DNA of 64,000 nt from Mytilus californianus (GCF_021869535.1 NW_026262745.1:35526001-35590000); one strand, 5' to 3'; counted from the first letter of the stretch, positions 6,774-47,500 are shown. A program made the numbers and translations. The notes: generated from the sequence alone by a model not told the origin.

Positions 6774-8273
6774 TTTTTAGCTCACCTGGCCCGAAGTGCA
6801 TGGTCGTCCGTCGTCGTCGTTAACTTTTTACATTTTGAACTTCTTCTAGAGAACCACTGAATGGAATGAAACCAAACATTGCATGAATGTTCCTTATGAG
6901 GTGCTGACCAAGTGTTGTTACTTTGTAGCCGATCCATCATCCAAGATGGCCGCCAGCAGGGGACTTAGTTTAACATAGGGCCCTATGGGAAATACATACA
7001 AATGTCTTCTTTTAGAGAACCAGTGAATGGAATGAAACCAAACATGGCATGAATGTTCCTTATGAGATGCTGACCAAGTGTTGTTACTTTGCAGTCGATC
7101 CATTATCCAAGATGGCCGCCAGCGGGTGACTTAGTTTAACATAGGACCCTATGGGAAATACATACAAATGTCTTCTTTTAGAGAACCAGTGAATGGAATG
7201 AAACCAAACATGGCATGAATGTTCCTTATGAGGTACTGACCAAGTGTTGTTACTTTGTAGCCGATCCATCATCCAAGATGGCCGCCAGCGGGGGACTTAG
7301 TTTAACATAGGACCCTATGGGAAATACATACAAATGTCTTCTTTTAGAGAACCACTGAATGGAATGGAACCAAACATGGCATGAATGTTCCTTATGAGGT
7401 GCTGACCAAGTGTTGTTACTTTGCAGTCGGTCCATCATCAAAGATGGTCGCCAGGGGGGGACTTAGTTTAACATAGTACCCTAAGGGAATTACATACAAA
7501 TATCTTCTTTTAGAGAACCACTGAATGGAATGAAACCAAACATGGCATGAATGTTCCTTATGAGGTGTTGACCAAGTGTTGTTATTTTGCAGTTGATCCA
7601 TCATCCAAGATGACCGCCAGCGGGGGACTTAGTTTAACATAGGACCCTATGGGAAATACATACAAATATCTTCTTTTAGAGAGCCAGTGAATGGAATGGA
7701 ACCAAACATGGCATGAATGTTCCTTATGAGGTGCTGACCAAATGGTGTTACTTGACAGTGGGTCCATCATCCAAGATGGCCGCCAGGGGGGTGGGGACTT
7801 AGTTTAACATAGGACCTTATGGGAATTACATACAAATGTCTTCTTTTAGAGAACCACTGAATGGAATGAAACCAAACATGGCATGAATGTTCCATATGAG
7901 GTGCTGACCAAGTGTTGTTACATTGCAGCGGATACATCATCCAAGATGGCCACCAGGGGGGACTTAGTTTAACATAGGACCCTATGGGAAATACATACAA
8001 ATGTCTTCTTTTAGAGTACCACTGAATGGAATGAAACCAAACATGGCATGAATGTTCCTTATGAGGTGCTGACCAATAGATGCTTCTTTATTGCCCATTA
8101 ACTGTTCAAGATGGCCACCAGGATATTTTATTTAATAAAGGGGACCAATATTAAACCAAATTTGGCCTCAATCATTATTTGGGTATCTGTTATGATTTTT
8201 ATCTATCTTTACATGATTTCTAAAACCAAAGTAGAGTCAGGTGAGCGACACAGGCTCTTGAGAGCCTCTAGTT
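6774..8273 (+). mobile_element. Helentron-like element B carrying about 7.4 copies of a 166 bp satellite monomer
   Basis: Starts TTTTTAGCTCACCTGGCCCGAAG. The ORF-track offsets 6918/7084/7250/7416/7582 show the 166 bp period. Ends CAGGTGAGCGACAC-AGGCTCTTGAGAGCCT-CTAG-TT. Inserted at a TT site in A. Confidence 0.85.
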
Positions 8274-8318
8274 ATAGGAGTTATTGCCCTTAAATGACAA
8301 ATTTTACCATTTTTTTCA

Positions 8319-28000: not shown

Positions 28001-29639
28001 TGTCAAATTAAGATCTAAAAGTACCCGTATTTCTTTTTTTTTTATTTTAGGTTTAGATGCCGGTGCCATCATAGGTATCCTGTTATCATGTTTACTGCTT
28101 TTAGCACTTTCATCCTGCGTATTATACCTACTGTATAGAAGAAAAAGGTATGGTGTAAGATATTCATGTTTATCAGTAACAACGTCGGATTCCGAAAAGT
28201 CTGGAAACAGAAAATCATTTTTACATGTACATGTACATGTACTTGTTCTTTTATATATATATGTATCTAACATAGTCGGACAGTAACATAGGATTGAATT
28301 GTCTGAATATCATTTTAAACGTTCGATTGAACTTTAAAAAAATAACGAGAAAATTGTATACAAAAAAGTATAACAAAAATACCGAACTCCAAGGCAAATT
28401 CAAAAAGAGGGAAGTCCATAAAAATTGACAAAATCAAACGCTATCAGTCAACGGAACAAGTGAAAAACATCTGCCATATTCCTGACTTGGTACAAGCATT
28501 TGCCGAAGAAAATGGTGGGTTAAACCTTGTTTCATAGCTAGCTAAACCTCCCACTTGTATGACAGTTGTCTATAGTTCCGTTATATTGACAAAATTGAGT
28601 GAGCAACCCAAACAGACGTAATAGGTTATAAGATGGATGGATATTGTATCAGTGAATCGATTGTGTAACCATGCTACAGTAGTCGGAATATATACTACCA
28701 CAAACGGTGGTTACAACAAACTCTTATATAATTTTTACTTTGCTCCCCACTGGAGGTATCTTTTTTTTATTAATGGAGAAGTATTGACAAATTTCAATTA
28801 GTAGCATCTAAATGATATACTAGTAATCACATGTTAACTCGTCCAGAGCTTTTTGAGATAATTTAAATGTGCTATATGCCTTTTTATGTTGTTTATAATT
28901 CTTTTTTGAAACTTTTGGCTGATATCAATACTATTGTTAATCATGTACAACTGACACAAAATCTATATACCAAATATACTTTGACCTGCAACTTTAACTG
29001 ACACAATCGAGACGTTCGAGGTGAACTTTCATATTTCAGCTTTTTGTTACGGTATTCTTCTTTCTTAGAAATAAAATTATTACGACAACATTAAAATAAA
29101 ACCAAAGATTACTTTCTTGAACGTTATTTTCGATTTCCAATGCTCATCAACTTCGTTTTTGATTAAGACTTCCATTTCAACTGTTTTGATTCGAGTGCCA
29201 CTGTCGAGATTATGTAGACAAAACGCGCGTTTCATTTTCATCAAATTATATGCCTGGTATCTTTGATGGTTTTTTTTTAATTTTAGAAGAATAAACGCTT
29301 ACTTTCAGTGAAAAGATAAAATCTGCATCTTAAGTCAAATATTTATAGTCCCTAAAATCTACTGTAAACAAAACTACATTTTTATTATTCTTTATTTCAT
29401 TTAGAAGAAAAGACAAAAAAGACCAGATTAATCCTGAAGATACGATAGTAAAGGCTGTGAATGACTACAATAACACAAGTCTTGGAGAAAAAAGACACAT
29501 TTACAAGAGAGACACTACCAGCCTCAATACCAAACCTACTAAAGCAATGAATGAAAATGATACACTGTCTTCAGTGTATGAAAATCTCGGAGAAAGAAGT
29601 GTTACATCGTCTATTATTAATGTAAAACTTCCTATATGA
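22096..29639 (+). CDS. VR1: type I membrane protein, signal peptide - vWA - Ser/Thr stalk - TM - tyrosine-motif tail, 358 aa
   Basis: Exons 22096-22168 (MMMRLMVFLIIFGILFTNCRGAKK), 25284-25838 (vWA, DVIWLVDASSS...NLCGIVPSIVPKI), 26901-27017 (DNETTATMLDGCVEWVEPTTTE...), 28051-28147 (TM, GLDAGAIIGILLSCLLLLALSSCVLYLLYRRKR) and 29405-29639 (tail ending SSVYENLGERSVTSSIINVKLPI). Phases 1,1,1,2; all junctions in frame. Confidence 0.88.
22442..22485 (+). ncRNA. Minimal type I hammerhead ribozyme (PLE-associated type)
   Basis: Stem I ACAUCA/UGGUGU. Core CUGAAGA (22448-22454). Stem II GACA-UUAAU-UGUC. Then GAAA, a palindromic stem III AUCCGGAU, and an AUA cleavage triplet ending at 22479. Confidence 0.75.
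22860..24610 (+). mobile_element. tRNA-head SINE-like or tandem repeat unit interrupted by a TIR element
   Basis: GATCTAACATTRTTGGGCTGTTATTTAGACGAATTA occurs at about 22863 and 24556, marking one repeat period. A box TGGTCGAGTGG (24446-24456) and B box GTTCGAATC (24502-24510). Confidence 0.6.
23146..24408. mobile_element. Non-autonomous TIR element with a nested SINE-like fragment
   Basis: Left end CCGGGGCGTGTTTTATTGG; right end CAAAAAAATACGCCCCAG. GGACCTCTTCTGG is subterminal at both ends. No clear TSD. A common dispersed-repeat fragment lies at about 23950-24120. Confidence 0.6.
26984..27181 (+). repeat. Perfect 99 bp tandem duplication spanning the VR1 stalk-exon splice donor
   Basis: Copy 1 is 26984-27082 and copy 2 is 27083-27181. 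GAAG|GTATTA occurs at 27017/27018 and again at 27116/27117. Confidence 0.9.
27705..27860. repeat. Imperfect palindromic (foldback) element of about 155 bp
   Basis: ATAAAGAATAAACATAAATTGTCTCGAAAT..TTATTTGTAC..GGCTCAAAACAGG.TAGAAA pairs with TTTCTACCTGTTTCTAAGCCTTGTACAAATAA..ATTTCGGGACAATGTATGTTTATTCTATAT. Confidence 0.7.
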
Positions 29640-31529
29640 AATATTATGTGTTTTGTTAACGTATTGTTTAGCTAGACCTGTTTTACGACCACAGCAAAAT
29701 AAATAAATAAATTTAAAAAAAAATGAAAAGAAATACGCTTACATACCTTTGGACTTGTTTTCAGTTTTGCTGTATTTGTTTTTTTGGTTTTTTTTTAGAT
29801 AACAAGAAGATAAAATTATGTGCAATAATGTAAACTATTGTTTTTATTTGTTTTAAGCTCAACCAGTATAACTGACTCAAAAATAAATTTGGGATTCAGA
29901 CGATTGCAAATAACATAAATTTCCTCTGATGTTGCTGGTCTTAACATCATTTGGTATCATACCGTACCGAACATGTACTGAAAGTGCATCCCCAATTGTT
30001 TCTGAATGGGATTTAAAACACATTTCAATACTTTTTTTTAATAAATTTGAGTTTCCTTCCTTGTTTTGGTTTCTTAATTAACTTTGTCTACTTTTTTATT
30101 TTTGTGATATAAATCACAATCAGTTGTTATACTGAGTGTAAACATTTTGATATATTAAACTGATTCAAAACTAGAGAGTATTAACAAATAATTGCAAATA
30201 CTTTATGAACAACATACAATTACATCCATATGCATGATTTTATACATGCAAATTTTAAAAAAGTTACCAGGCAATGTCACAAAACTTCGATCTCCTATGC
30301 ATTATGTTATTGCCTCAAGCAAAAAAGGAAAATAGAAATTAAAAATTAAAAAATCGTAAGTCGAAAATACAGTAGAGGGATACACAGGTTTACATGTACA
30401 CTTAACATATGTAGAAAAGTAATGGTACACCACAGCAATAAAACAAGATAATGACGAGAAAGGGACTCGCCTTACACTCTAATGATTTTAGACGATTAGA
30501 AAAACTTAATCCATCTTTTCAAATGGTCTGAAAAAAGATTCGATCTTTTTATGTAACACCATCAGGCATAGTCGCCTATTATCGTGACGTCACAATAGGA
30601 ATTCAGAGGAAAACAAGAATATATGACAAATGAAGAACTGAGATCAAACGAACCACACGTTGCTTAAATAAGAATAACCAACAGGCAAGGGAAAGAATAA
30701 ATTGACTAAGATTGTTTTTGTAAATATGCCAGAAATGGAGCAGAAATTGATTTGACTGGTTGTTAAGATTATGTCACTAAGAATTGAGGTTCTTAGATTT
30801 CTATTTTTAGATATATTCATGAAAACAACTGTGGAATATCGCTTTTCTATCTGACATTTTCAGTCTACCTTTGAAAATACAATTGAATATGTGACTCTTC
30901 CGTTGGTTGCTGTCTATCATATTTGTTTTTCGTTGATTGTTTTTTTCCACAATTATTAAGTAGTTTTTTTTCTTTATTGTACTCTCCAATAATATTGGTA
31001 ATTCCTGTAATCCCTTTTCTGTATCATAAAAATACTAGTATTTTTTTTGCACCATTTTTTTTATAGATTCAGATTCAGATTTTGATGTTCCGCCTATAAA
31101 AACGAGGAGAATGGGCATTATGTTTGTCAGTCTATTCGTCCATCCGTTTGTCTATCTTATAGGAAGTTAAAGTTTTGGTTGAAGGCAAGTTTAAGTTTTG
31201 ATTTAATGAAGTTCAATACAACACAACCGTCATCTTAAATGAAAATTTAGTACATATTAATTATGTGAATGTTTTGAAATATATGCCATATATAGAATGA
31301 GACTGAGATTTCGCGTTTACATGGAAATGTGATAGTGCAAGAGGCTCATTATGTTTTATGGACACGGATACTTGTTTCTATTTAAGTTTATATCAGCTTT
31401 CAATTTGGAACTTTCTATTTCTATGTGGCAACATTTCAGTGCCTGCATATTGAGTATATATATATATCTCCCATTTGATATTTCAGATCTTGCGTTTCCT
31501 ATCCTTATTTCATTGATAGAGGGTTGCTG

Positions 31530-31950
31530 CTTACAAGGTAGCTATTGAATTAAGGGTCATTCCTTCAAAACGTACGGACGCACCACCAGTTTGTTGACCG
31601 TTATGGAATATCTGTGTCACAGATGACCATGGACATGTTCCAATTGTCGCAACCATATTCCAGTCCTCTTTTCCTCGATTCTGACAATATTGAATGAGAC
31701 ATATCACCGGATTTGTACGTGCATGAGCAAAACAGGGGTGCCACATGTAGGGCAGGAACTTTTTATCCCTCCGGATCACCTGAGTTCACCCCCGGTTTTA
31801 GTGTGGGTCGTGTTTCTCGGTCTTTAGTTTTCTATGTAGTGTTTTTGGAATGTTCGTCTTTTCGTCGTTTCTCGTTTATTGCCATGGACTTGTCAGTTTT
31901 TTTTTCAAATTTTGACTTCTTTGAGTTTTGAATGTCCCTTTGGCCTCTTT
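31530..31950 (+). mobile_element. Decayed C-terminus and 3' UTR of a PLE-like RT element
   Basis: Translates as LTR*LLN*G...HHQFVDRYGISVSQMTMDMF, followed by the 3' motif family seen at 18600-18880. Confidence 0.6.
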
Positions 31951-32668
31951 TGAAACCACCTTGTTTTTCCATACAGTAGGTGATGTAAGGGTTTTAACAA
32001 AATAAAAGTGAAACATAATGTACGAATGTCCAATAATTTACATAACATTATAATCACTAGAATTTCAATTCATATGACTTTATATGAAAGCGTATTTTGG
32101 TACAAAACTTGATAACAGAGTCACTGCATATCTTTTTTCACAAACAATAGTTGGAAGTGTTTTTTTCTGTAAGATGTTCATGGCTAGATAACTCTTATTG
32201 TGTAAAGATTGTTTTTGTTTACCACAAATCATTCAGCAACAAAAGGATTGAGTTATCACAGTTTAAAAAACAAAAAGAAAATTGGGATTTTATTAAAATG
32301 TTATTGTTTCTTATTCAGCACGTCTAGTGTCAGGTCATGTTAACATTGTGAATATGCACACAGCATAATTAAATTTGTCTCACATTTATCCTTGAAAGTT
32401 ATTGTGTCCAAAATAGTTATTTAAATTATGACTTAACAAAGTAGAAAAATTGAAAGGATATTTAATTTTGTAAGGCTATATATGACTGTATATGATTAAG
32501 AAATGTTTAATAGAAAGATGCTATTTATCACATGTAGCATATAATGTTCAAATTTGTTCACCGAAAAAAGCACAACAACGAATTCGAATGAACATTTCAG
32601 TTACAAAAGAAAGTTACAAAGAAGAAGAAGAAAATACAGAGCAGAGGATTGAATAAAAAAGGTTATTA

Positions 32669-35600
32669 ATGGAAAAACTAGTCATCATTTTGTGTACCAC
32701 GCTTTGCATAACTTTGTTTATAAACAGAACACAGTCTACAAAAAATGGTAAGTTTGTTTGCATGCGTGTTAACTTTGTATGAAATTTTATACGATTTACG
32801 ACTTTGTATAAGGATTGACGAAGATATAGAAATATTGTTTTTTCTTGGATTTCTCTGTTTCCGGAAGTACAACCTTTGCTAATGCGGGGCGTCCGGTTTG
32901 TCGTTCGGGATGTATGAATACACATTCACGTCCGGTCGGAATATGGGAACGTTAAATCAAATGTAGAGAGTGTGCAATATACAATGCACGTTAAAACTCC
33001 TCCAAATCGATCACAGTGGTACGTAGGTGGCCTGTTGCAAGGCAAACTATGTGCCCTTATCCAACATACCCCATTTTCAAGTAGCAGTACAAAACACCCA
33101 TCCTTCATCCCTGTCGATACTTACTTTGCATGACCTATTTATTGAATTATTTGTTCATTTGTTCTCGCCCTGAACATGTTTGAAAGATTTGCCATTGAAC
33201 GTTTAGCAAACAACAATAATGAAATCATAATTTGAGGACATTAGAATGATTGCTCAAGTAATCTCTTTTTTATTTATGAAAAGTGTCAATTCTCATTTGC
33301 CTGTGGTATATAGGTTCATGTACACGTAAACGAAGTATTAAAATACATTTGATGTTTACTTTTATGGAAAAAAAATTATTTAAAAACTCATCAAAGATAC
33401 CAGGCTTATAATTTTGCACGCCAGACGCCCGTTTCATCTGCACAAGACTTACCAGTGACACTCGAATCAAAACAGTTGGAAGGCCAATTCAAATACGAAG
33501 TTGAAGAGCAATGAAAACCGAAAATTTCGAAAAAGTTATCCGAAATAGATAGCAGCATTAAGTGAATGACCAAGTAAAATACCCAACAATAAATCTTTCA
33601 TATGTGCATCAATGGAAATAACATACATGACACATTTCCATATTTTATATTCATATGGCAAACAGAAAACAGAGAAGTGATGGAGCTGAAAATGTGTCAT
33701 AACCTAAAGCTTACCAATATAAGCTCGGTACCAAATATCAAGAAGCTCTGTTTTTGTAAATTGCGTAGAAACATGTGACAGAAATGTGTTACGAATAGAC
33801 GAACTGACGGAATTACAATATTTTAGAAGACTTTTATTGATTGATGTCCTTAAGTAAACTTCATTCTCTTAATCTTTTGAGATAATCGAAAAAGATTAAA
33901 GTTTCATTGACCTTTAGATATATTATCGGTCTTTTTGCTGTACCGGTACATCTTGTATTCATTTATGCAGTTTATTCTTTCCACAGATATTACATTTTTG
34001 GTTGATACAACAGGTGACGTTACGCAAGACGAATTCAAACAAGTCATCGACTTCATTTATAACATAACAAGTAGATTGGCTATAGGACCAGAAGATAATA
34101 GGGTTGCCCTTGTCACTTTTAACACAATACCAACGACACAGTTCGATCTAAACGATATAAGTGGCAAAGTTAGTTTACTGAATGCTATAATTTCCACTAA
34201 GAACTACAATTTAACTGGGACACGTGAAACGCACAAAGCATTAAGTCATATTGAAGACAATATATATGTTTCATCATCAGGAATGAGGACGGACGCACAA
34301 TCTTCGTTACTACTAATCACGTATGGACAGTCACAATCTCCAACACAAACACAATTCGCTGCATACGTTTTAAAATCGACAGTTCAAGCTATTTACGTTA
34401 TAGGAGTTGGATCACTGATGTATGACCAAACTGAAAGAAGTGATTTTCCAAATATAGCTAGTTCAATAGAAAACATATTCTATATAGAAGAAGTTTCAAT
34501 TCTGTGCAATTATATCTTAAGTATAACTATTAAACTGGGTATGTATGCTTTATATTGTAAACCACTTGTAAGAAAAGTAAAGATACCTGTCCGGATGTCA
34601 GTTACAAACCATCAGTATCAGAGTAAAATTTTATCTCATTAAAAAAGCTTGAACAGGTCCACAAAGATTGAAAATTCAGCGATTCAATCTTGATTAAGGG
34701 TCAATTTAAGGTTTCAATGCATCTACATCATTCTTTAATTTTTCAAAACATGCATTTCCATAATGAAAATTATGAATTCTAATATGACGTGCTTCTTTCG
34801 CTTTGTAAACAACACCGTGATAAAAGTCTCGATATATCTATACTTAGCGCAGACTCAGAGATATACATAATAATGGATGTTACAATATACCTCCCACGTA
34901 AATCCACATGTATCGAAACCTATTTGCAAACGCTATGCCGATTTTTTTTTTTAAATTGCAATTAAAAAAAAGACTACAGAACACTTATTCTTATTCGGAT
35001 GCATAACAGAAAGAATTAATGCACAAGTGCTCGGCGAAATCTACAAAATCCAATTAAAATAAAATTCCGCGAAAGTCCACTAATGCTTTTGGCGCATTTA
35101 AGTCCTTTCAAAACATGACGTCATACAAATGAAAACGCTAAAGCTGAAGGTTTTTCCGTTACGTGAACCATTGAAATTCGTATAATATTGCATTAAAATG
35201 CATTTTTGAGGTAGGATTTGTTTTGCTTTCTATTCTATTGCATTATTCGCATATTTACTGATTTCAGCAAGTCAACATGGCGGCTCCTTAGTAACGAAAT
35301 GTCTACTTTGGATTACGAGAAAAACATGCAAATCAAAAATGGCAAATGTTGGGTTTGAAAATTAAAAGAATTAAAAACAATTTTTCTAGCTGTTATTTAC
35401 GAAATATTTATGCAAGCTACAGATTTATTAGAATGTTTTAGCCTTATCCAACAGGGAGTAAAAAAGAACAGCCCCACATACGACATACCCACTCTCGCTT
35501 CAGTTTTTTAATGACCGTATTTGTCCTCTTAGAATCGAAATAATTCATGGAAGCCATAGCTTTGTTGTAAATTTACACATGGCCTGGGCCGTGATATTCG

Positions 35601-38600
35601 TTAATTTTATCCCTCGCTAACGCTCAGGATAAAATTCGAATATCACGGCCCAGGCCATGTGTAAATTTCCAACAAATCTATGGCTTCCATGAATTATTTC
35701 TTAAACAATGTGTCAAAATGAGTGTACTCACGATTTAGGCGATTTGTACTATTAGTACATCGTGTCTTGCTGATAATTTTTGCTGCATAAAGTTTCTCTT
35801 CATCTATTACAGTTCTCAGAAATTTGAATAAAATGCTCGCGAAGGTCAAGGACGTACACTACCAAGAATTCAGTTACATTTTACTTGTACTTTTCTGCCC
35901 TCTAGAAACGAAAAAATAAGAATAAAATCGGCATTTAAGGGCAAAAATTACGATAAAAAGTCGCCTGACAATTTCTTTATATGTATATCTTGTCTTGTTG
36001 AACACTTTTGCTTATGAAAGTTTCTTTGTATCTATCATGCGCTTAAAGATAAAAAAAAAAGAAAATAATGGGTAAAATTGTTATTTGTTATTGCAATCAC
36101 TATTAAAAGGAGTCGTCTGACAGTTTGTCCAATTAGACGGAAGGTAGATCTCATTATTCTGAACATTTTTGCCCCTGTCAAATTGTCTCTATTTATAATG
36201 GTTAATGCACTTAAGATAAAAGACAAGGTTACATCTTATCCCTGTGATTTATTTTAAGCCTTGGTAGCCATGTTGGTTGGCAGGCTGTGTATGACCAGAC
36301 ACATTTTCCAAACTAGATAAACAAGGATAATGGTGGTCATGTTTGGTTCTATTTAGCATAGTAGGTTCAACAGAGATGATTTTTTTTAAATGAACGGATG
36401 ACGACTAGGGACAACAAGTAAAAGCAATAGCTCACAGTGGCCCTTTTGGTAAGATGAGATAAAAAGAAAGCACAAAACCTGATTTTTTAATTTGCGTATT
36501 CATGACATAAACATAATTTCTTTTTGGAAACATTTAAGTGATAGAGCATCTGCCAGACATAGTTGATCAAATGTAATGATGGTATTTCTTAAATTAAATA
36601 TGGGAGATAATGATAAAAGTTTTTTTGTACAGATCTATAACATAAGTTTTCCCTCAATTGTTATTTATTATTAGAATGGTTCATAGAAAACAGTTTAGAA
36701 GGATTATGGATAAAAGAACACGGTTTTATCCGAATTCTTTTCAGTGAAAGCACAAATAGTTTTTTTTTCTATGTAAATGATTTTTTTTCTGGCAATAAAT
36801 TGAAATGGAAAAAATGTGCCAAAAGCGAATGTTTTTCATACATTTAGGAAATACATATAAACAACTTATCACGTTATTTTGCAACCCATTTTGTTGATCC
36901 TTTGCATTAAAATATAGGATGTTGACCCTATATAAGTGTATGATTTTGATACTGTAAAAATGCCTGACACTTATCTATTAGAATAATATTTTCAATGAAA
37001 AACTTATTGATAGATTTAAAGGCTAACGAGTGTATTAAAAAACCGTTACAGTAAATCGTTTTTATAATGATATTGAAACCGAATTAAATGAGAATATTGT
37101 TTTTTTTAGATTTGAATGCCACACAATCTGAAGTTGTTGGTTGCTCACCAATAACAACCACTTGGACAACAATATCAACAACAATACCAACAACTACAGA
37201 AATGAAAACAACAGAGTTAACATATTCAACAGAACTAACAGATTCAACTTCAACAGATTTAACATATTCAACAGAATCTTTATCCCAAGAAAAAACAAGT
37301 CTTAAACTAGACACTGGTATATATAATTTAAATTCTTAAAGACTTAAATAATCGAAAGTTGTACATGGACAAAATCGAAATACACATAACACGAAATTCA
37401 CAAACGCTCGAACAAAACACCTTTATACCTTGCTGTTATAACGTCGTAAACGACTTTTATTATGTTCCTTTGGTGTCTTTGGACTATCTCTTGCATACGT
37501 CTGACAGTCAAATGGAATGTTTTCTTTCAGACGGCGATTCATTTTCAGAATGCAAGTGGCAGAAAAATTTAGGAACTGAGTTCCACCCTGAATAGTCCAG
37601 TTGGTCAACAGTTTTTGGTTGAGTTAATAGGTTCTTGTTCTAAAAACAGCTATACAAAACCATTTACAGTGTTAGAATCCTCGTATTCATGGTTTAACAT
37701 TTTAGATATTTATATGAAATATGTAAATATTTTTGCGAATATAACCCAATCATTGATGGGATGGGTTATCTAAGTTTTTGAATTATAAACTTCTATTTTA
37801 TGTATATATATTTATCTTTTTTATGGCTTTTTCGTCATATTTTTTGTATCTACACAATATGTTAAGTTCTTAAACGACCAGAATCTAAAACATGTTTTGA
37901 ATAAACCAAACAGAGGCTGTCAAACACATGTCATCAAAATAACAAAAATCGTAAGTCTCAAATACAAAGCAACATACATATAATTTTACGCTTGTTTAGT
38001 TTTACTTGACCTTATACGTAATCTTTTCATATATGCAATCATTCCGTGTGACCTTTTTTTCTTTAATACTGAATAGTTTTGAATTGCATTGTTTCTGTTC
38101 AGGTAATTTTTCTTGGATTAATATGCATGTATTCCTTTCCTGTATCAAATTATAACTGAATATCAATAGTAACAATGAACGTAGGTCTTAATTTTATCCT
38201 GGTGAAATAATTTTTAATCCTGATGATTTCAGATATTTGTTTACTTTCATTTAAAGATAATGGGACAACAGCTTCACACTTGAATGGTTGTGTTGTGTGC
38301 TATCCAGCGACAACGGAACTAACTTCAACAGAGAAAACAGTTTCCAAAATAAACAAAGGTACTTTAAATGATTTTAATTTTTCGACACCACTTATCAGAA
38401 ATAGCATGGAAGTACATCAATGGCACATAGAATCCTGACGCTGATCAAAGTCAAGCATTAAGATAAAGAAATGATTTACATTTTTCTGATAATATATATC
38501 CAATGCCGCAGCAACGATACGCATGTCACTGAGAAATTTGTTAAATTTAACTGGCCTGGCATCTTTTTTACTCGAATTTATGAACTTGTGAATTTATCGT

Positions 38601-39526
38601 TTTTTTTATTCAAAATATCATGCAATATCTTATACACACAAGAAGCTTTTGTATTAATCCTTCAATTAGGATTGTCATTAAAATGTTTGTCTAATGCAGA
38701 CACTACTGCAATTATAACTATAATTATTTCTTTATTTATTATCTTAATTGTTAAGATTTTTATATGTACCTGTAATTATAACTATAATTATTTCTTTATT
38801 TATTATCTTAATTGGTAAGATTTTTATATGTACTTGTATTATTTTTTTTATATTCCAGGTTTACCAGCTGTTATCATGATAGGTATCCTGTTATCGTGTT
38901 TATTGAGTTTAGTCCTTGTAGCATTGGTTTTATACCTTTTGTGTAATAGGAAAAGGTATATGTATAATTCATCTTCTTAATTTACTATGTGACATCCCGA
39001 ATATTGGACAAACAGAAAGCCAATTATTTTTCCTGCATATATTTAAAGTATTAAGGCAATGTATGATAAAAAAAAAATGACCATTCTGAATAATTATTAC
39101 ACTTTTGACTTCAAGTAAGATAGAACCCACAATCATGTTTTACTTGCAAATAGATGATGTGACGGTGCTGCCGTGGTACGAATAGTCCTTATAGGTAATT
39201 ATTACAATTCACATCAATGTTTGTTGAAAATAGCGGTAAAAGACGAATAAAATGCAAGAATTGTAAGGTGCAAACTACCTCAAAAGGTTGTTTTTTTGTG
39301 AGCAAAGTACATTACAATAAGTCTTGAACTTGCTTTTCATAGGAACTAAATGTTTCTTGAATAAAATGATGTGCTCTTGTATTTCAAGTAGAAGTTAGAA
39401 TATTGTGAACAAGAAAATATTTTTTTATTATTTTTTACTAAATACAGAAGAAATAACAGAGAAGAAAAGATTGATCATGATAGTACGATAGAAAATGCAG
39501 AAAAAGTTACAATGACGCAACTTTAG
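32669..39526 (+). CDS. VR2: vWA - double stalk - TM receptor with a truncated, tyrosine-free tail, 371 aa (chimeric; possibly a decoy or decaying gene)
   Basis: Exons 32669-32747 (MEKLVIILCTTLCITLFINRTQSTKN), 33987-34538 (vWA, DITFLVDTTGD...), 37110-37316 (stalk A), 38257-38358 (stalk B, DNGTTASHLNGCVVCYPATTE...), 38859-38955 (TM, GLPAVIMIGILLSCLLSLVLVALVLYLLCNRKR) and 39448-39526 (RNNREEKIDHDSTIENAEKVTMTQL*). All junctions in frame. Confidence 0.85.
32870..33120 (+). mobile_element. SINE-like dispersed repeat (second, inverted copy at about 42340-42570)
   Basis: Shared GTATGAATACACA..GGAACGTTAAATC..GAGAGT..TGCACGTTAAAA..GGTGGCCTGTTGCAAGGCAA. GGACGTTAAA/CACGTTAAA motifs recall Deu/Nin-domain SINEs; this family assignment is unverified. 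Confidence 0.45.
33395..33530 (-). mobile_element. Degenerate hammerhead-bearing repeat (related remnants at about 29160-29260 and 54430-54830)
   Basis: The minus strand reads TTTTGATTCGAGTGTCACTGGTAAGTCTTGTGCAGATGAAACGGGCGTCTGGCGT...AAGCCTGGTATCTTTGATGAG. The core is mutated (CTGGTAA). Confidence 0.55.
35537..35700. repeat. Near-perfect 164 bp palindrome (hairpin-type MITE)
   Basis: GAAATAATTCATGGAAGCCATAG..AAATTTACACATGGCCTGGGCCGTGATATTCG..AATTTTATCC and its reverse complement flank the centre CTCGCTAACGCTCA. Confidence 0.85.
38710..38837 (+). repeat. 64 bp tandem duplication just upstream of the VR2 TM-exon acceptor
   Basis: AATTATAACTATAATTATTTCTTTATTTATTATCTTAATTG(T/G)TAAGATTTTTATATGTAC(C/T)TGT at 38710 and 38774. 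Confidence 0.85.
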
Positions 39527-40339
39527 GAGTAAAAGGATATATCTACAAAAAGTGTATTACCAGCTTCGATATCAAACCTACAACAGGAAAGAATGTAAAG
39601 GATATACTGACTTTCTCTTGAAGATAGAAGTGTTACCTTATCTGTCATCAATCTTAAAATATCTCTATAAAATATAATCTGTTTTGTTTACATGTATTTA
39701 CTTGCCTCACATGTTCGCTACTTCGAAACTACAAAAAAAACTTCGTCAAGTGACTAAAAAGGGAAAATGTTTCAAAATCCTGTCAATCGTTAAAGGAAAA
39801 GTATTATCATTGAAAAATTACATAAGTTTTGAAATTTCTTTTAATAATGTATACAATGTCACTTGATATTGATACAACCTTTTGGTTTCATATATTTGTT
39901 GAACCTAACTGCCACCAAGCCTCCGAAAGCCCTTGGAAGGTTTTTGCATTAGCTGTTGTCCAACAACTTTTCCTGTCAATCATTGTATTTTCTACAACTT
40001 TTCCATAAAATCTTGTCCTATAAATTGAAATGCCAATTGACATCAAACTTGGCCGGAAACATTCTTAGAGGGTTATTTTAAAAGTTATATCCAATGAGCC
40101 GGTTGTCAAAGATACGGCATAAATATGCAAGTTAAACCATACGATAACATTCACAATATGTTTAATGTCAACACCTTCTCTAAAGTTCAAATTATAATGG
40201 AAAGAAAGAACAATTTACACCCCTTTTATAATCGTGGTTGTTAATCCAACACTTTGCCGCCTTTACTTTAAAGAAAATATGTCAAAATTCCATTAACAAT
40301 CTGAAAATGAGACCAGAGACAAGCAACATTTCAATGTTA

Positions 40340-43300
40340 ACCTGAAACATTTAAGGCTTTTCTGTTTAGTTCTTTTGTTTCCCCCCGAATAGGGTTAATA
40401 TATTGGAATCCCAAACTTTTGGTCTCGAGTATTCCCGATGAATACTACACAATAAACATGTACCATCTGCATGTGAATCAATTATATATATAGTTGATGT
40501 GGTTCCCTCGGTTTTAGTTTGTAACCCGGGTTTGTTTTCTCTCAATCGATTTATGACTTTTGAACAGCGGTATACTATTGTTGCCTTTATTTATATCTTC
40601 CCCCTAAAACAGGCCAGGCGTGCAATTATATTATATTGTCTTATACTTTTTAAAACAACCGAAAACGTAAACTGCAACTTAATCGATTGAACATTTTCGA
40701 AAAAAAATCTGGGCTGGTGTAGTATTCTAAGAGACTAGATGTTGTCTGAAAAATGGTTTCCATTTTTCGAAAAGAAAACGTTTTCAACACAAAATATACG
40801 TAAAGCTAGTTTAAAAATGCAGAAAAGGATTGTCATTTATGTCCGTTTAACTGAAGGCTTCCGTGAGGATTTAATATGATGTGAACATATAATTAAACGA
40901 TTTAGATAGTTGACTGCACCATTTAAAATTAGTTAAATTCTCTCTTTTCTATTCAAGATAATAAATTGCAAGGGCACTTTGCTTATTCAAAATTAAAGAT
41001 GTCATCAATGTTGACCTGGTTTTTAATACATTGAAAAATACCTTATGACCAATAGATGATTTACACGTCGAAAACATCATTAAATTGCTGCATTTTTCTT
41101 GTTGAACATGGTGAGTGTCCTTGTAAAGAACGATAAACAAACATACCGAACTCCAAGGTTAATTCAAAAAGGGGAAAGTCCATAAAACGTGACAAAAATG
41201 AAAGCTCGACAATATTAACCAATAGAACGAATGTAAAACAACTGTGATATTTCTGGCTTGTTACAATTTTTTCCGAAGAAAAGAGTGGGTTAAACCCAGT
41301 TTTATAGCTATATAAACCTCCCACTTGTAAGACAGTTGTTTATAGTTCCGTACAGACTTTATTTTTTATATCAAAAAATGAAAGCCTGATGGAAAATTAA
41401 CAGCAAACACGACATAGTTGTAATGTACACCTCAAATATGAAGGTAACTTTCTAGTTTCTACATCGTAATCAGCATGAGACATTGCCAACAGTATCATTT
41501 GCTTATGCACTAATTTTCCATAATTTTCGAAATCTGTACATAATATACTATACATTTATTTCTCCTCGCCTTTATGGGAGATGAAGATATTTTTCGAGTG
41601 CATTGTCCGATGGAAATATGATTGTTCGAGGGTGAACAAATACGAAATGAAAAAGCATTTGATACCAAAAATTCCGAAAAGTTTTGCCAAATACGGCTAA
41701 AACTCGATATTTACCATACTATCGCTGCGTTTAGACATTACATAAACCGCGTGTTGACACGATGCTTAGACGGGGAATTCGACACTTTGAGTGAATATTA
41801 TGCTCAGAGGGGATCATAATGTTCTGTTAAATATTACTTTGGTTAAGATTTAATTTACAAATACTAATTAAACTATTAATACTTACATACCGTTGAATAA
41901 AATGCACTATCAAATAAAGTTGGTCTTCTGTTAGATTTCTTAATGTGAATTGGTTCTAACAAATCCTTTTTTATATAAAATTTCATTTATGACGACCTCT
42001 TTATATTCATATGAAGTATGAAAAGGACGAACAAACTCTGATAATTTGTTTAAGTTAAGGAGTATTTCCCCCATACACACGGAAAACTTAGATAGGCCTA
42101 TTAACTGCTTAGGTATCGTATTCTCGGAGCTCTCGAAGACTTAAGTATATACAATATTTTACATTTTCAGAGTATTGTTGCTACGAATTATAACCTTAGA
42201 ATGTCTAAAACGATTTTTTCGTGGAAACTTAAGTTCGCTTTAGTGTAGGATTTGATTGATTGATTGTTGTTAGTTTAACGTTCAGTAGCAAATAGTTCAT
42301 GTATGTTCAGGACGAAAACATATTCACTCTAAAAACAATAGATAGGTTCTACAAGGTATGGATTGACCGGAGTGAAGGGCGGGTAATTTGGACTGCTGCA
42401 TTGTAATGAGGCTGCGTTTGATAGCAAAAGAAACGTTGCCATGCAACAGGCCAAATACGGAAAACTCAGAGAGTTGTTACAAGGTTTTTTTAAACGTGCA
42501 GTGAGCGTAGTACTCTCTTTACACGAGGCACCAGATTCAATTCCGACAGGACGTTGCTGTGTATTAATACACACACAGCCAACTTAAGCAAGGATTTTAC
42601 GTCATGAACGGGAGGAGTTCAGGTGACCAATGTTCATGCCTTAGCAAATGTTCAGTGTTGTGAAAATTTTAAAGAAGAAACTTATATCTTTGTAACGTGA
42701 CTTCCACGAAGACCTTTCAAGTTCAATTTTGCGGATGTTGTCGCAATAATTATTCCAGAGATTTGCTTCTTTGACAGTCTCGAATTGGTTACAACTGTTT
42801 CCGGTTGATAAGATTGTTTGTGTTGCTTTGCGGTAAGGTTGTTTTTTACATACAACAACTGTTTTCGGTTGATAAGATTGTGTGCTTTGCGATAAGGTCT
42901 TTTTAAAATGCAACATAGATAGAGTACGCTTCATCTTTCCTCCCCCTAAAAAAAAGAGAGAATATCTTTCGAATATCTTATTTTCCACGACTACAACACC
43001 TTCAGGCAATGATTACCTGAGACATTTAAGGATTTTCTGTTCAGTTCTTTTGTTTAACTCCTAAAAGGGTTAATATTTTGGATTTTCAAACGTTTGGTCT
43101 CGAGTATTTCCAATTTTCGAAAGCAAATGTTTTCAACACAAGATAGACCTAAAGCTAGATTAAAAATGCAGAAAAATGATTGTCATCTATGTCCGTATAA
43201 TTAAAAGCAGTCGTACGGGATTTAATATCGTGTGAACATATAATTATACGATTTAGATACTAGAAGTTGACTGCACCATTTTAAATTAGTTAGATTCTAT

Positions 43301-43455
43301 CTTTAATATTCAAGATAATAAATTGCTTGGTTTTAGAAAAAAATCAAAGATGTCTTCAATTTGTACCTGATTTTCAATACATTGAAAAATACCTTATGAC
43401 CAATAGATTATTTACACGAAGAAAATATCATTAAATTGTTGCATTTTTCTTGTTG
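40340..43455 (+). repeat. Diverged direct duplication in the VR2-VR3 intergenic region (about 40340-41105 versus 43015-43455)
   Basis: Collinear shared blocks CTGA(A/G)ACATTTAAGG.TTTTCTGTT, TTTGGTCTCGAGTATT, GTTTTCAACACAA, AAAAATGCAGAAAA, GTTGACTGCACCATTT, TACATTGAAAAATACCTTATGACCAATAGAT and TGCATTTTTCTTGTTG. Confidence 0.75.
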
Positions 43456-44529
43456 TGCAAAACCTTTTATCCAACGTCAATACAAAACAAAGAAGACCCT
43501 CATAAACATATAGGAAATTTCATGCAAGTGCATATTTATAAATAAGGAAAATTTATGGCTTTTTTTAGAAGTGACCTACGTCTGTTTCTATGTGTAAGAT
43601 ATACCATTATAATCACGACATAATATAAATATTATTTTTTTTTTAACAAAAGATGACATGAACCCTTATATTATCAAAATATAGAGAAATATAATATATT
43701 TCAAAATACCACATGTAGATTTCGTTACAATTATACGCTGCTTGTAACCTCTTCTGTTCTCTATTGGTGTGGATAGGTTTAGACAAAAGTAGTAAACAAC
43801 CCTTTTGTCATTTATTGCTAATTAACAAGTCTTTAATATAGTCAGTGATTTAAGAGTTTTAAAAATAAAAGTGAAAAAAAAAAAGATTTCAAATGATTAA
43901 ATCAAGGCGTAAATAGGTACATAACTTGATAACAAAGTCACTATATACCCTTTCAGTAAACAATAGATGGAAGTGTTTGCTACTGTGTGATTTTCATGGC
44001 TACCGAACTCTTATCGTGTCAACATTGTTTACTGTGCACCACGGTTCATTCAGCAATAAAATGATTGAATTATCAAAGACTGATCACGATTTAAAAAAAC
44101 AAAAAGAAAATTGAGATTTTATTAAAAGGTTATTGTTTCTTAGTCAAGCCGTCGAGTGTCACTTCATTTTAACATTCTTACAATGAACGTTGCATAATTA
44201 CATTTGTCTCATATTCAGCCTTGAAATTTGATGTGTTGAAAACAGTTAATTGAAATACGACTAACGAAAGGAAAAAAATAGAGAAGGGAACATTAATTTT
44301 GAAAGGTTATATATGATTGTATATAATTCAAAGAACTCGTGTAATAGAAAGATTTCAACTGTCACATGAAGCTATAAATGTTTAGACTTGATTACAGACA
44401 AAAGAAGAACTATGTATGTCCAATGGAGATATACAAGAAATAATAAGGAGAAAAGGTGTTACCATAAACTTTGAATCAAACAAAAAGAAGAAAATACGGC
44501 ACTGAGGATTCAATAGAAAATGGTTATTC

Positions 44530-47500
44530 ATGGGACAGCTAATCATCATCTTGTGTACCGCGTTCTATTTAATTATAATGTTAACCAGTACACGTTCTGC
44601 AAAAAATGGTAAGTTTTGGCATGTTTGCCAATACATCATGAAATTTTGTATGGATTATTACTTTGTGAATTAGGATGTTTGTCTCAGTAACCAGTTTTTT
44701 CTCTTTTAAATCAATTAACACAAGTACTACTTCTCATTTGCCTTTGGTGGTATATAGGCCAATATACAAGTAACCGGAATATTAAATTGCATATTGTTGA
44801 ATAGCGGTAAAAGAGTTACAACAAACTATGTAAAAGTTGACCAACCTAATAACTTACTCCTTAATTCTAAATAGTTAAATATTTGTAGACTTTTCTTGCT
44901 TGTCCGATTAATAATACAAGTTTCAAATTCAATTATTGCTAAAATTTATTTATTGTTATGCAATCGAGGAGAGTTTTGCATTAGGAGGTCTTTTTTATCT
45001 GTGGATTTAATTACAAATATTGCATAAACAATGTTTTAAACCTTTAAATGATATAACGTAACACTAACAACAAGACGTACCCTTTTTGTGTAAACTTCGT
45101 TTTGTGTCTTCTTTATCTACGTACGTCCTAAAAATGCATGAAATTTTAGCGACTATCAACAATTGAATCTATATAATTTATATGTTATGATGAATGTTAC
45201 AATTTTGTTATCAGGCAATAGGATCTTCTTTAAAAACAACATTCCGATAACGAAAACCATTGTTTACTTACATTAGTATCTTGTTCACTGTCTGTAATAG
45301 CATAAAACTAAGTTTTACCAAGTCTTAGAGTAAAAATTTAAGATATTTAATATAAGTTTAATATATAATATTTAATATAGTTAATATGTCGGTCCGACTG
45401 TTGATTTTAATGTAAGTGTTGAAGTCAGATTTATTTAAAGAAACAAGCTGGTGATTTATAAAAAAGTGAAATAAAAAAAAGAACCCATTTTCTTATTTTA
45501 TTGATATTAAGTTGGTCTTATTGTTGTATTATTGAATGATGAAATTTAATATTTTTTTCCACAGACATATCATTTTTGGTTGATACCACTGATGACGTTT
45601 CGCAAGACGAATTTTATCAAATCATCGACTTCATTTACAACATAACGAGTAGATTGATAATAGGACCGAATGACAGTATGGTGGCTCTAGTCACATTTAA
45701 CACATCTCCTAAGACACAGTTTCATTTCAACGATATAAGCGACAAATCAAGTTTACTGGATGCTATTATGTCAATTAAAAACAACAGTTTAACAGGTACA
45801 CGTGAAACGCACTTGGCATTAAACCATATTGGAGACAATATCTATGTTTCATCTCAAGGAATGAGGACAGACGCACAGTCTTCGATGCTACTTATCACGT
45901 ATGGAAAGTCACAATCTCCAACACAAACACAATTCGCTGCATTTTTCTTATCATCGACAGTTCAAGCTATTTACGTTATAGGAGTTGGATCGATGATGTA
46001 TGACCCAACTGAAAGAACTGATTTTCCAAATATAGCTAGTTCAACAGAAAACATATTTTATATAGAAGAAATTCCATATCTATGCCATTACATCTTAAAT
46101 ATAACTATTAAACTTGGTATGTATGCTTATCTAGAGAAAGAACTCGTAGGAAAAGTTAAGATTCCGGTCATAAAAAAGTCACTTATAAACTATCATTGTC
46201 AAGAGTGAAGATTCCATGGCTTAATCTAAATTCCGTATAAAAAAGGAAATATGGTATGACTGATAATACTGACACAGCTGGTTTCAGCGCACCTACTCCA
46301 TTCGTACCCATGCATACCCATTAAAAATTTAACAAAACATTGCATATATGATGACAAAATATCAGTTTGTGTTAAAAAAGCATTCATCCACGACAAAATA
46401 TATTAGCGCCACATTGTGAAAACTATAGGTTTCATGTGCGCCACTAAAACTGGTATACAACTTTGACAATTTGATAAATTCAATATGATTTGTATACTTA
46501 AGATATTTAATAAATGATTGACTTCACTCTACATTAACTCTGGCTTAGTCCCAACAGTCTAAACTGGTTGAGTTGAAGTTATTTTAATCATAAAAATTAT
46601 TAATTTTAACGCTGAACTATGTATACCCTATTTGTAAACAGTTATAAGAAATCTCATGTTCTGTGTGAGTAAGCCAAAGGCTGTTATTTTAACATACGAT
46701 GCCTCTCTGAAAGTAATATGTGAAAAACTGTTCTTAATGAAACATTTTTAGCTTTTATAAGTGGTCTTTCAAATGGGCATTAAGGATAATGTGTCGCTTT
46801 TTCAAAATTTCAATTTTTAGGAAATAAAGGGCTCATAGAACAATCCCTCCTTTGGTAGAGATAACAAAAGGACAAACAGAAAAATGTAAGAACAGAGATG
46901 TATAACGTCTTTTCAGAGAGCACTAGACAAGAACATTTTATTGGGTTCACGATTTTTTCGAAATTAATCATCATTAGAAAAGCACATGGGCAAAATATTA
47001 AAAACGAAATACGCACATAACCCCAGTGGCAAAATAAAAGAATCTAAACAAAAAAAGCTAAAATCTTTTTTTCTCTCTCTTTGCCTATGTATATACAACA
47101 TGAAGCCATCAGACAATTCTTTTGTATCATCATAACTTAGTTTTCAATATACTTTTACAAGAAAAACTGTTGACAAGACGAAAAAGCTATTGGCATTTTT
47201 TATTTTAATGTATAAAATTTTCGATTACAGTAATACTTTTTCTGTGAAAATTTTAATTGGCAAATGTTATTGAGCTAATGTGAATAATGGACCATCACAG
47301 TAAACTGCTTTTATAAAGCGCTGAACATCGAGTTGAATGTGGAAAGTTCGTCATACGGCGTATGTATATGAATGAAAATTAATTTTTCAGATTCGAATGC
47401 CACACAGTCCGAAGTTGATGGTTGCCCAGAAATTACAACCACTTCGACAACAACAACAACAATACCAACAACAACAGAAATGGAAACAACAGAATTTACA

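What the first reader, a model, noticed from the sequence alone, without database searches (positions are those of the whole stretch)
32669..39670. VR2 is a chimera: VR3-type 5' half fused to VR1-type 3' half by an internal tandem duplication
Seen: the VR2 upstream region, signal exon, vWA (38 differences in about 184 aa versus VR3, counted by eye) and stalk A match VR3. Its stalk B (DNGTTASHLNGCVV versus DNETTATMLDGCVE), TM (GILLSCLL), tail and flanking intron bases match VR1. The VR3 TM and tail are unrelated to these. Inference: duplicating the segment [VR1 3' half + VR3 5' half] in an ancestral A-B pair gives A5A3 - B5A3 - B5B3, which is exactly the observed order. The junction should lie at about 37450-38180. 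This created a new pairing of ectodomain and signalling tail and explains the doubled stalk.
Basis: partly seen in the sequence, partly recalled or inferred. Interest (0 to 1): 0.82.

Follow-up and report, generated by a model that had tools for sequence, protein, structure and literature searches.

The report
Mussel chimeric vWA receptor gene
The middle gene of three neighbouring mussel cell-surface receptor genes is a hybrid of its two neighbours, made by one old off-register tandem duplication and kept in at least four Mytilus species; the way it formed is already well known.

Summary
The window is Mytilus californianus (GCA_021869535.1). VR2 is RefSeq LOC127715656 (XP_052077778.1, 371 aa), and my six-exon model reproduces that protein exactly.

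- **Two parents.** VR2's promoter, signal exon, vWA exon and first stalk exon are paralogous to VR3: 84% nt and 79% aa in the vWA exon, which is exactly 38 differences in 184 aa. Its second stalk exon, TM exon, tail and flanking intron bases are paralogous to VR1. VR1's vWA is only about 33% identical to the VR2/VR3 type.
- **One diagonal.** Homology blocks lie in order on one patchy diagonal, 26874-37400 against 38230-47726. The junction lies inside 37401-38229, within VR2 intron 3.
- **Doubled stalk.** The two breakpoints sit in non-equivalent phase-1 introns, which doubles the stalk and keeps the reading frame.
- **Old and shared.** M. trossulus, M. edulis and M. coruscus have the same chimera.
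- **Same age.** Both halves are about 1.8 times as old as the californianus/trossulus split (ratios 1.78 and 1.79), which fits a single event.

Caveats:
- VR2's inherited tail is cut to 26 aa by a 1-nt deletion seen in three species, so the ITIM-like SVYENL motif of VR1 is not paired with the new ectodomain.
- No A-B-only species or haplotype was found.

This is a new, clean instance of a known mechanism.

The parts
22051..29639 (+). VR1, the A-type parent (373 aa). Exons: 22051-22168 (signal), 25284-25838 (vWA, MIDAS DASSS), 26901-27017 (stalk DNETTATMLDGC...), 28051-28147 (TM), 29405-29639 (76-aa tail with SVYENL).
   Evidence: All splice sites are GT-AG and the length equals the 373-aa product on record. 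Pfam VWA. Orthologues P0006, P0008 and P0010 keep the tail and the (S/T)VYENL motif.
32669..39526 (+). VR2, the chimera (LOC127715656; 371 aa for isoform X2, 379 aa for X1). Exons: 32669-32747 (signal, B-type), 33987-34538 (vWA, B-type), 37110-37316 (stalk A, B-type), 38257-38358 (stalk B, A-type; alternative acceptor at 38233), 38859-38955 (TM, A-type), 39448-39526 (26-aa tail, A-type but frameshifted).
   Evidence: The spliced translation is identical to P0001 = XP_052077778.1. Isoform X1 is P0004. RNA-type contigs of run X1 cover only these exons, and stranded RNA reads of X13 lie on the vWA, stalk A and stalk B exons.
44530..52647 (+). VR3, the B-type parent (391 aa). Exons: 44530-44608 (signal), 45565-46116 (vWA), 47391-47642 (stalk), 49631-49730 (TM GDRAIIVVSVITVV...), 52455-52647 (tail; this exon is inferred).
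   Evidence: All splice sites are GT-AG. The CDS start equals the called gene start, and the total equals the 391-aa product on record. The TM exon is conserved in M. trossulus. The tail exon was chosen by length match and acceptor quality only.
26874..37400 (+). Duplication copy 1: the end of VR1 intron 2, the VR1 stalk, TM and tail exons, the intergenic region, and the VR2 promoter, signal, vWA and stalk A exons with the first ~85 bp of intron 3.
   Evidence: Collinear BLAST blocks against 38230-47726; local alignment of the intron starts.
38230..47726 (+). Duplication copy 2: the end of VR2 intron 3, the VR2 stalk B, TM and tail exons, the intergenic region, and the VR3 promoter, signal, vWA and stalk exons with the first ~85 bp of intron 3.
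37401..38229 (+). Junction interval inside VR2 intron 3 (37317-38256). It has no detectable homologue in VR1 intron 2 or VR3 intron 3. About 670 bp of it (37405-38072) is absent from M. trossulus and M. edulis.
   Evidence: Smith-Waterman scores against shuffles; nhmmer finds nothing; four-way alignments; cross-species BLAST. DNA contigs of X10 and X12 cover it at single-copy depth.
39527..39670 (+). Former tail-coding sequence of VR2, now 3' UTR. It is homologous to the VR1 tail in other frames, and an 11-nt deletion removes the SVYEN codons.
   Evidence: Nucleotide alignment of the VR1 and VR2 tails in two species. tblastn of the VR1 tail hits 39493-39612 and 39614-39667 as two separate matches.
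34688..36263 (.). High-copy transposable-element insert in VR2 intron 2. It is not part of the duplication homology.
   Evidence: Summed contig depth is 10^3-10^4 in the DNA runs against about 20-50 in the flanks, with many loose ends at 34775 and 35704.

Best explanation
VR2 is an expressed, conserved chimeric gene. The ancestor had two old paralogous five-exon genes in tandem, A (now VR1) and B (now VR3). Each was built as signal, vWA, Ser/Thr-rich stalk, TM and tail, with intron phases 1,1,1,2. A single tandem duplication of roughly 10 kb then copied the stretch from intron 2 of A to intron 3 of B. Equivalently, this was an unequal exchange between non-homologous intron positions.

The copy junction joined B's promoter, signal, vWA and stalk exons to A's stalk, TM and tail exons. 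Both broken introns are phase 1, so the frame was kept and the fused gene carries two stalk exons.

The event predates the split of the californianus/coruscus lineage from the edulis-complex lineage. Before that split, a 1-nt deletion truncated the A-type tail to about 26 residues. VR2 therefore presents a VR3-type ectodomain on a VR1-type stalk and TM without VR1's tyrosine motifs.

Shown: the chimeric structure, its order, its presence in four species, the equal relative age of the two halves, purifying selection on the vWA exon, and the annotation. Transcription is shown on three VR2 exons; splicing across the junction is inferred from contig depth and the RefSeq models. Inferred: that it was one event, the recombination mechanism, and any receptor function.
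For: - **Collinear homology.** Self-BLAST blocks lie in order on one diagonal.
- **Gene model.** My exon model equals XP_052077778.1.
- **vWA exons.** vWA aa identity is about 79% for VR2-VR3 and about 33% for VR1 against VR2/VR3. In the tree the B-type clade is separated from the A-type clade at 100/100.
- **TM exon.** VR2-VR1 are 66% identical in aa; VR2-VR3 only 16%.
- **Other species.** The syntenic loci carry the same six-exon chimera in M. trossulus (L002) and M. edulis (L004, where my model gives 382 aa, as annotated). M. coruscus (L005) carries its first four exons, including the stalk A to stalk B junction, before the locus ends.
- **Four-taxon ML trees.** The 5' half gives ((VR2cal,VR2tr),(VR3cal,VR3tr)) and the 3' half gives ((VR1cal,VR1tr),(VR2cal,VR2tr)), each 100/100. 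Alternatives are rejected with AU p <= 1.4e-4.
- **Age.** The paralog/ortholog distance ratio is 1.78 (CI 1.66-1.93) for the 5' half and 1.79 (CI 1.61-2.00) for the 3' half.
- **Selection.** vWA dN/dS is about 0.3 between VR2 orthologues of californianus, trossulus and edulis.
- **Tail.** The same frameshift and stop are seen in californianus, trossulus and edulis.
- **RNA.** Exon-only coverage in run X1. Its 548-nt contig starts in stalk A with 207 nt, and most of the other 341 nt is accounted for by the depth on stalk B (about 101 nt), TM (about 97 nt) and tail (about 129 nt). Stranded reads of X13 lie on the vWA, stalk A and stalk B exons.
- **Not a misassembly.** Independent DNA contigs of another coded organism (X12) cover 37222-37572, 37661-37890 and 37888-38433.
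Against: - The exact breakpoint cannot be seen. The interval 37401-38229 matches neither parent intron.
- The middle of the two intergenic regions (29730-31935 against 39768-43800) shows no homology, so the continuity of the duplicated unit is inferred from its ends.
- The age ratios mix coding and non-coding columns and use only gap-free columns of hard alignments.
- The vWA exon tree alone is nearly star-like inside the B clade, partly because of apparent gene conversion in M. edulis.
- No pre-duplication A-B locus was found.
- The splice joints from stalk A to stalk B were not listed in the truncated joints table. They are inferred from depth arithmetic and from the RefSeq models.
Confidence: 0.8

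Rival explanations
1. Two-step origin. B was first duplicated as a whole gene. The 3' end of one copy was then replaced by a second partial duplication, an ectopic recombination or a gene conversion from VR1.
For: The breakpoint and the middle of the intergenic regions are not alignable, so a single contiguous unit is not directly visible. Gene conversion does seem to operate in this cluster: the M. edulis VR2 vWA exon looks like VR3.
Against: - The relative ages of the two halves are the same, 1.78 and 1.79.
- A-type and B-type 3' exons share no detectable similarity that could guide a conversion (TM 16% aa).
- There is no relic of a B-type TM or tail downstream of VR2's stalk A.
- Homology also covers the 3' flank and the promoter, in the order expected for one unit.
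Confidence: 0.12
2. The six-exon, two-stalk layout is ancestral. VR1 and VR3 each lost one stalk exon and then diverged.
For: The stalk exons of all types share the same start: D, ten residues, then G-C at positions 11-12. They are therefore homologous modules that could have been tandem exons.
Against: - VR1's vWA is only about 33% identical to VR2/VR3, while VR2-VR3 are about 79% identical. The reverse holds for the 3' exons. A simple loss model cannot produce this mosaic.
- VR4, the A-type outgroup on the minus strand, shows one stalk-like exon in the tblastn scan and reading-frame inspection.
Confidence: 0.03
3. An assembly artefact joined two genes or two haplotypes.
For: None was found. 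The nearby 99-bp perfect tandem repeat in VR1 shows that local assembly oddities are possible.
Against: - The same structure is found in four independently assembled species.
- DNA contigs of two runs cover the junction interval at single-copy depth.
- RefSeq transcript models and RNA contigs agree.
Confidence: 0.01

Closest known systems
[quoted passage not shown]
   Same: A tandem duplication that starts inside one gene and ends inside its neighbour unites the 5' end and promoter of the downstream gene with the 3' end of the upstream gene. Both parents stay intact on either side. The order is parent, chimera, parent.
   Different: The Drosophila cases are mostly young, segregating and often lost. 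This one is about 1.8 times as old as the M. californianus/M. trossulus split, is present in all four species examined, and is under purifying selection in its vWA exon. It also doubles a symmetric phase 1-1 exon.
Anti-Lepore-type hybrid genes from unequal crossing-over between tandem paralogues (recalled from general knowledge; not looked up here)
   Same: Parent, hybrid, parent arrangement, with the 5' part of the hybrid from the downstream gene and the 3' part from the upstream gene.
   Different: Anti-Lepore exchanges occur at homologous positions of similar genes and keep the exon number. Here the exchange points are in non-equivalent introns of genes that are only about 33% identical in aa, so homology-guided pairing is unlikely and an exon is doubled.
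Vertebrate paired immune receptors such as KIR, LILR and Siglec pairs (recalled from general knowledge; a lead, not a test)
   Same: A gene cluster holds a receptor with an ITIM-like tail motif (VR1, SVYENL) and a neighbour that lacks the motif because its tail is truncated.
   Different: There are no Ig domains. VR2's TM has no charged residue for an adaptor. VR2's ectodomain resembles VR3, not the ITIM-bearing VR1. No signalling data exist for molluscs.
Single-pass vWA receptors of the ANTXR1/ANTXR2 type
   Same: Signal peptide, one N-terminal vWA domain, a stalk, a single TM and a cytoplasmic tail.
   Different: Pfam finds only VWA above threshold and no ANTXR domain, even at E <= 0.1. The stalk is mucin-like rather than Ig-like. 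The B-type vWA has DxTxD where the MIDAS motif DxSxS would be.

Membership tests
Chimeric gene born from an off-register tandem duplication | The 5' part is paralogous to one neighbour and the 3' part to the other, and the two parents are clearly different from each other. | tested here: met
   vWA aa identity is 79% VR2-VR3 against 33% for VR1. TM aa identity is 66% VR2-VR1 against 16% for VR3.
Chimeric gene born from an off-register tandem duplication | The parents flank the chimera in the order A5A3, B5A3, B5B3, and homology continues into non-coding flanks on one diagonal. | tested here: met
   The blocks lie in order with an offset of 10.0-11.8 kb and include the 3' flank (29640-29729~39680-39767) and the promoter (31936-32668~43801-44529). 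The middle of the intergenic regions is not alignable.
Chimeric gene born from an off-register tandem duplication | Both halves of the duplicated unit have the same age. | tested here: met
   ratios 1.78 (CI 1.66-1.93) and 1.79 (CI 1.61-2.00); internal-to-terminal branch proportions are alike in the two halves.
Chimeric gene born from an off-register tandem duplication | A single identifiable breakpoint where homology to one parent hands over to homology to the other. | tested here: inconclusive
   The handover is bounded to 37401-38229, and the sequence within matches neither parent.
Chimeric gene born from an off-register tandem duplication | The chimera is transcribed and spliced across the junction. 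| tested here: met
   RefSeq models XP_052077777.1 and XP_052077778.1 and the M. edulis 382-aa model. Exon-only RNA contig depth and the 548-nt contig in run X1. The splice joints themselves were not listed in the truncated table.
von Willebrand factor type A domain (PF00092) | Match above the Pfam gathering score. | tested here: met
   91-122 bits against a cut-off of 23.8 for VR1-VR4 and the orthologues.
von Willebrand factor type A domain (PF00092) | Intact MIDAS start motif DxSxS. | tested here: not met
   VR2 has DTTGD and VR3 has DTTDD. VR1 (DASSS) and VR4 (DKSAS) do meet it.
Collagen (the RefSeq name is 'collagen alpha-1(XX) chain-like') | Gly-X-Y triple-helix repeats or a Pfam Collagen match. 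| tested here: not met
   One search gives no collagen family even at E <= 0.1. The sequence has no G-X-Y run. The name reflects vWA similarity only.
ANTXR-type vWA receptors | Anthrax-receptor extracellular and C-terminal Pfam domains. | tested here: not met
   only VWA and VWA_2 reach their thresholds.
ITIM-bearing inhibitory receptor / paired receptor system | A cytoplasmic (S/I/V/L)xYxx(I/V/L) motif in the inhibitory member. | tested here: met
   VR1 has SVYENL. It is conserved as SVYENL in M. coruscus and M. trossulus and as TVYENL in M. edulis. This is a sequence motif only.
ITIM-bearing inhibitory receptor / paired receptor system | The partner has a near-identical ectodomain and a charged TM residue for an activating adaptor. 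| tested here: not met
   VR2's ectodomain is VR3-type (33% identical to VR1). The VR2 TM GLPAVIMIGILLSCLLSLVLVALVLYLLC has no charged residue.
ITIM-bearing inhibitory receptor / paired receptor system | Phosphotyrosine-dependent recruitment of an SH2 phosphatase. | not testable with these tools
   This needs biochemistry.

The most novel reading that the evidence does not exclude
The three genes work as an invertebrate analogue of a paired-receptor set that was made in one step. VR1 would be an ITIM-type inhibitory vWA receptor. VR3 would be a receptor with a different tail (YPDM and other tyrosines). VR2 would be a long-retained, tail-less form that shows VR3's ligand-binding domain on VR1's stalk and TM, acting as a decoy or as a co-receptor that joins VR1 complexes through the shared TM and stalk.
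Probability: 0.12. Interest if true: 0.6.

Novelty: new member of a known kind. Interest (0 to 1): 0.4.

Why it matters
This is an unusually clear, datable example of exon shuffling by a tandem duplication that ignored gene boundaries. Both parents are still in place. The hybrid has been kept in four species and its vWA exon is under purifying selection. The phase-1 introns explain why the fusion stayed in frame and doubled a stalk module.

It also shows that the RefSeq names ('collagen alpha-1(XX) chain-like', 'cartilage matrix protein-like') hide a small, apparently undescribed family of Mytilus proteins built as vWA, mucin-like stalk and TM. One member of that family has a conserved ITIM-like motif.

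It does not reveal a new mechanism.

Tried and rejected
- **Exact breakpoint.** Smith-Waterman against shuffles and nhmmer with each parent intron of both species found nothing inside 37401-38229.
- **Relatives of the A-type 3' half.** A word search with P0001 residues 262-371 returned only the protein itself. The region is too short and too fast-evolving.
- **VR3's 391-aa product.** It was out of the length range of the word search and has no reference, so its tail exon rests on a length match.
- **The look-up of encoding contigs on isoform X2.** This failed because only the longest product is on record. Isoform X1 worked.
- **vWA-exon tree alone.** It is star-like in the B clade, so I used longer concatenated regions.
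- **Big representative protein search and structure prediction.** Neither was run. The claim does not rest on absence of relatives or on a fold.
- **Literature.** Searches found no description of this family.
- **Assembly-artefact and 'ancestral two-stalk gene' readings.** Both were considered and rejected; see the rival explanations.

Full report
**What the window is.** The window is 33% G+C with no N. The word search with the VR2 vWA reading frame returned XP_052077778.1, 'collagen alpha-1(XX) chain-like isoform X2' of Mytilus californianus (P0001, 371 aa). The contig look-up placed isoform X1 (P0004, 379 aa) on GCA_021869535.1, JAKFGE010000009.1. L001 equals window 22669-49526, and the locus has three + strand genes of 373, 379 and 391 aa. 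A fourth vWA gene, VR4, lies on the minus strand (vWA exon 62064-61510).

**Gene models.**
- My six-exon VR2 model is 32669-32747, 33987-34538, 37110-37316, 38257-38358, 38859-38955 and 39448-39526, all GT-AG. Its translation is exactly P0001.
- Isoform X1 uses an acceptor 24 nt upstream, at 38233.
- VR1 is 22051-22168, 25284-25838, 26901-27017, 28051-28147 and 29405-29639, giving 373 aa.
- VR3 is 44530-44608, 45565-46116, 47391-47642, 49631-49730 and 52455-52647, giving 391 aa. Its last exon was chosen by length match only.
- Intron phases are 1,1,1,2 in VR1 and VR3, and 1,1,1,1,2 in VR2.
- Pfam finds only VWA above threshold. There is no collagen or ANTXR domain, so the RefSeq names are misleading.

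**The observation.** Self-BLAST gives one patchy diagonal.
- 26874-29729 matches 38230-39767 at 65-71% nt.
- 31936-37400 matches 43801-47726, at 82% in the vWA exon block with its flanks and about 70-72% in promoter and intron flanks.
- In the vWA exon proper, VR2 and VR3 are 84.2% identical in nt and 79.3% in aa over 184 residues.
- VR1's vWA is about 33% identical to both.
- In the TM exon, VR2 is 66% identical to VR1 and 16% to VR3.
- tblastn finds no VR1-type stalk, TM or tail near VR3, and no VR3-type TM or tail elsewhere.

**The doubled stalk.** All stalk exons begin in the same way: D, then ten residues, then G-C at positions 11-12. Examples are DLNATQSEVVGC, DSNATQSEVDGC, DNETTATMLDGC, DNGTTASHLNGC and, in VR4, DPTVTPQAVTGC. 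They are homologous phase 1-1 exons. VR1, VR3 and probably VR4 have one each, and VR2 has one of each type. This is what follows if the break in the A gene lay upstream of its stalk exon (intron 2) and the break in the B gene lay downstream of its stalk exon (intron 3).

**The junction.**
- Homology of VR2 intron 3 to VR3 intron 3 runs for about 85 bp after the donor, to 37400 and perhaps 37425.
- Homology to VR1 intron 2 starts about 30-60 bp before the stalk B acceptor, at about 38190-38230.
- The interval between matches neither parent and is single-copy in DNA runs.

**Other species.** The syntenic locus of M. trossulus (L002) has three genes in the same order. Its middle gene has B-type signal, vWA and stalk A exons followed by A-type stalk B, TM and tail exons. 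M. edulis (L004) has the same gene, annotated at 382 aa, and my splice model reproduces that length. M. coruscus (L005) has it as far as stalk B, where the fetched locus ends. Intron 3 is about 290 bp in trossulus and edulis, and about 940-1000 bp in californianus and coruscus. No species or haplotype with only VR1 and VR3 was seen.

**Trees and age.** I concatenated the alignable regions of each half for M. californianus and M. trossulus.
- The 5' half gives ((VR2cal,VR2tr),(VR3cal,VR3tr)).
- The 3' half gives ((VR1cal,VR1tr),(VR2cal,VR2tr)).
- Each has 100/100 support, and the other groupings are rejected with AU p between 6.5e-43 and 1.4e-4.
- The ratio of mean paralog to mean ortholog K80 distance is 1.78 (bootstrap CI 1.66-1.93) for the 5' half and 1.79 (CI 1.61-2.00) for the 3' half.
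- Both halves therefore look equally old, about 1.8 times the age of the species split, as one event predicts.

**Is VR2 a working gene?**
- vWA dN/dS between VR2 orthologues of californianus, trossulus and edulis is 0.28-0.33, similar to VR1 (0.15-0.44) and VR3 (0.23). The very close californianus-coruscus pair gives 0.96 on very few differences.
- The short 3' exons look less constrained, with omega of 0.6-0.9 on few sites.
- RNA-type contigs of run X1 cover only the exons. A 548-nt contig starts with 207 nt of stalk A, and most of its other 341 nt is accounted for by the depth on stalk B (about 101 nt), TM (about 97 nt) and tail (about 129 nt).
- Stranded RNA reads of X13 lie thinly on the vWA, stalk A and stalk B exons, with the first mate on the minus strand. 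That fits a + strand RNA in the usual library type.

**The tail.**
- The VR1 tail (76 aa) carries DYNNT, HIYKRD and SVYENL. The last motif is conserved as SVYENL or TVYENL in four species.
- In VR2, a 1-nt deletion seen in californianus and trossulus shifts the frame and gives a stop after about 26 residues. M. edulis has the same short tail. The endings are ...VTMTQL*...ETMTKV* and ...ETMPKV*.
- The old tail sequence survives as 3' UTR, with an 11-nt deletion over the SVYEN codons.
The new pairing is a VR3-type ectodomain with a VR1-type stalk and TM and a short tail without tyrosines.

[quoted passage not shown] An unequal exchange gives the same product. Because the exchange points are in non-equivalent introns of genes only about 33% identical, homology-guided pairing is unlikely. 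A repeat-mediated or non-homologous event is more likely but cannot be tested now.

A two-step origin remains possible at about 0.12. An ancestral two-stalk gene (about 0.03) and a misassembly (about 0.01) are unlikely.

**Verdict.** This is a new, well-documented member of a known kind of event, in genes that are already annotated, so interest is moderate (0.4).

Noticed in passing
window 26984-27181: A perfect 99-bp tandem duplication (26984-27082 = 27083-27181, 100% identical). It copies the last 34 nt of the VR1 stalk exon, its donor site and 65 nt of intron. The unit is single-copy in M. trossulus, M. edulis and M. coruscus. It is either very recent or an assembly slip.
   Followed up: partly
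L004:19235-19786 (M. edulis VR2 vWA exon): This exon is 88-92% identical to M. trossulus VR3 over nt 1-408 but 95% identical to M. trossulus VR2 over nt 433-552. In the vWA tree it falls outside the VR2 clade. It looks like gene conversion from VR3 into VR2 in M. edulis.
   Followed up: partly
window 62064-61510, 59384-59316 and about 55709-55610, minus strand: VR4 is an inverted fourth family member. It has an A-type vWA with an intact DKSAS MIDAS start, a short stalk exon (DPTVTPQAVTGC...) and a candidate last exon that encodes a TM followed only by EKKL and a stop. It may therefore be a naturally tail-less member.
   Followed up: partly
window 33987-34010 and 45565-45590: The B-type vWA domains (VR2, VR3 and their orthologues) have DTT(G/D/A)D where the MIDAS motif DxSxS should be. 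VR1 and VR4 keep DxSxS. Metal-dependent ligand binding may differ between the two types.
   Followed up: no
window 34688-36263: A very high-copy repeat sits in VR2 intron 2, with summed contig depth of 10^3-10^4. It is also covered by RNA reads, mostly with the first mate on the minus strand.
   Followed up: no
window 37405-38072 against L002:14684-14694: About 670 bp of VR2 intron 3 is present in M. californianus and M. coruscus but missing in M. trossulus and M. edulis. Whether this is a deletion or an insertion is unresolved.
   Followed up: partly
window 34489 to 37169: One RNA-type contig of run X1 (depth 36.6) joins these two places with non-canonical ends. It is 108 nt (in frame) short of the normal 34538-to-37110 splice. 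It could be an unaligned divergent allele or an alternative isoform.
   Followed up: no
window 6840-9791 and 13488-14570: Two satellite-like arrays. The first has a period of about 166 bp, with a direct block at 6840-8122 and an inverted block at 8877-9791 (88-93% between copies). The second has a period of about 191 bp.
   Followed up: no
window 52455-52647: The inferred VR3 tail has tyrosines in the contexts EYPDM, VKYIET and HEYKNV and shows no similarity to the VR1 tail. The exon was chosen by length match only.
   Followed up: no
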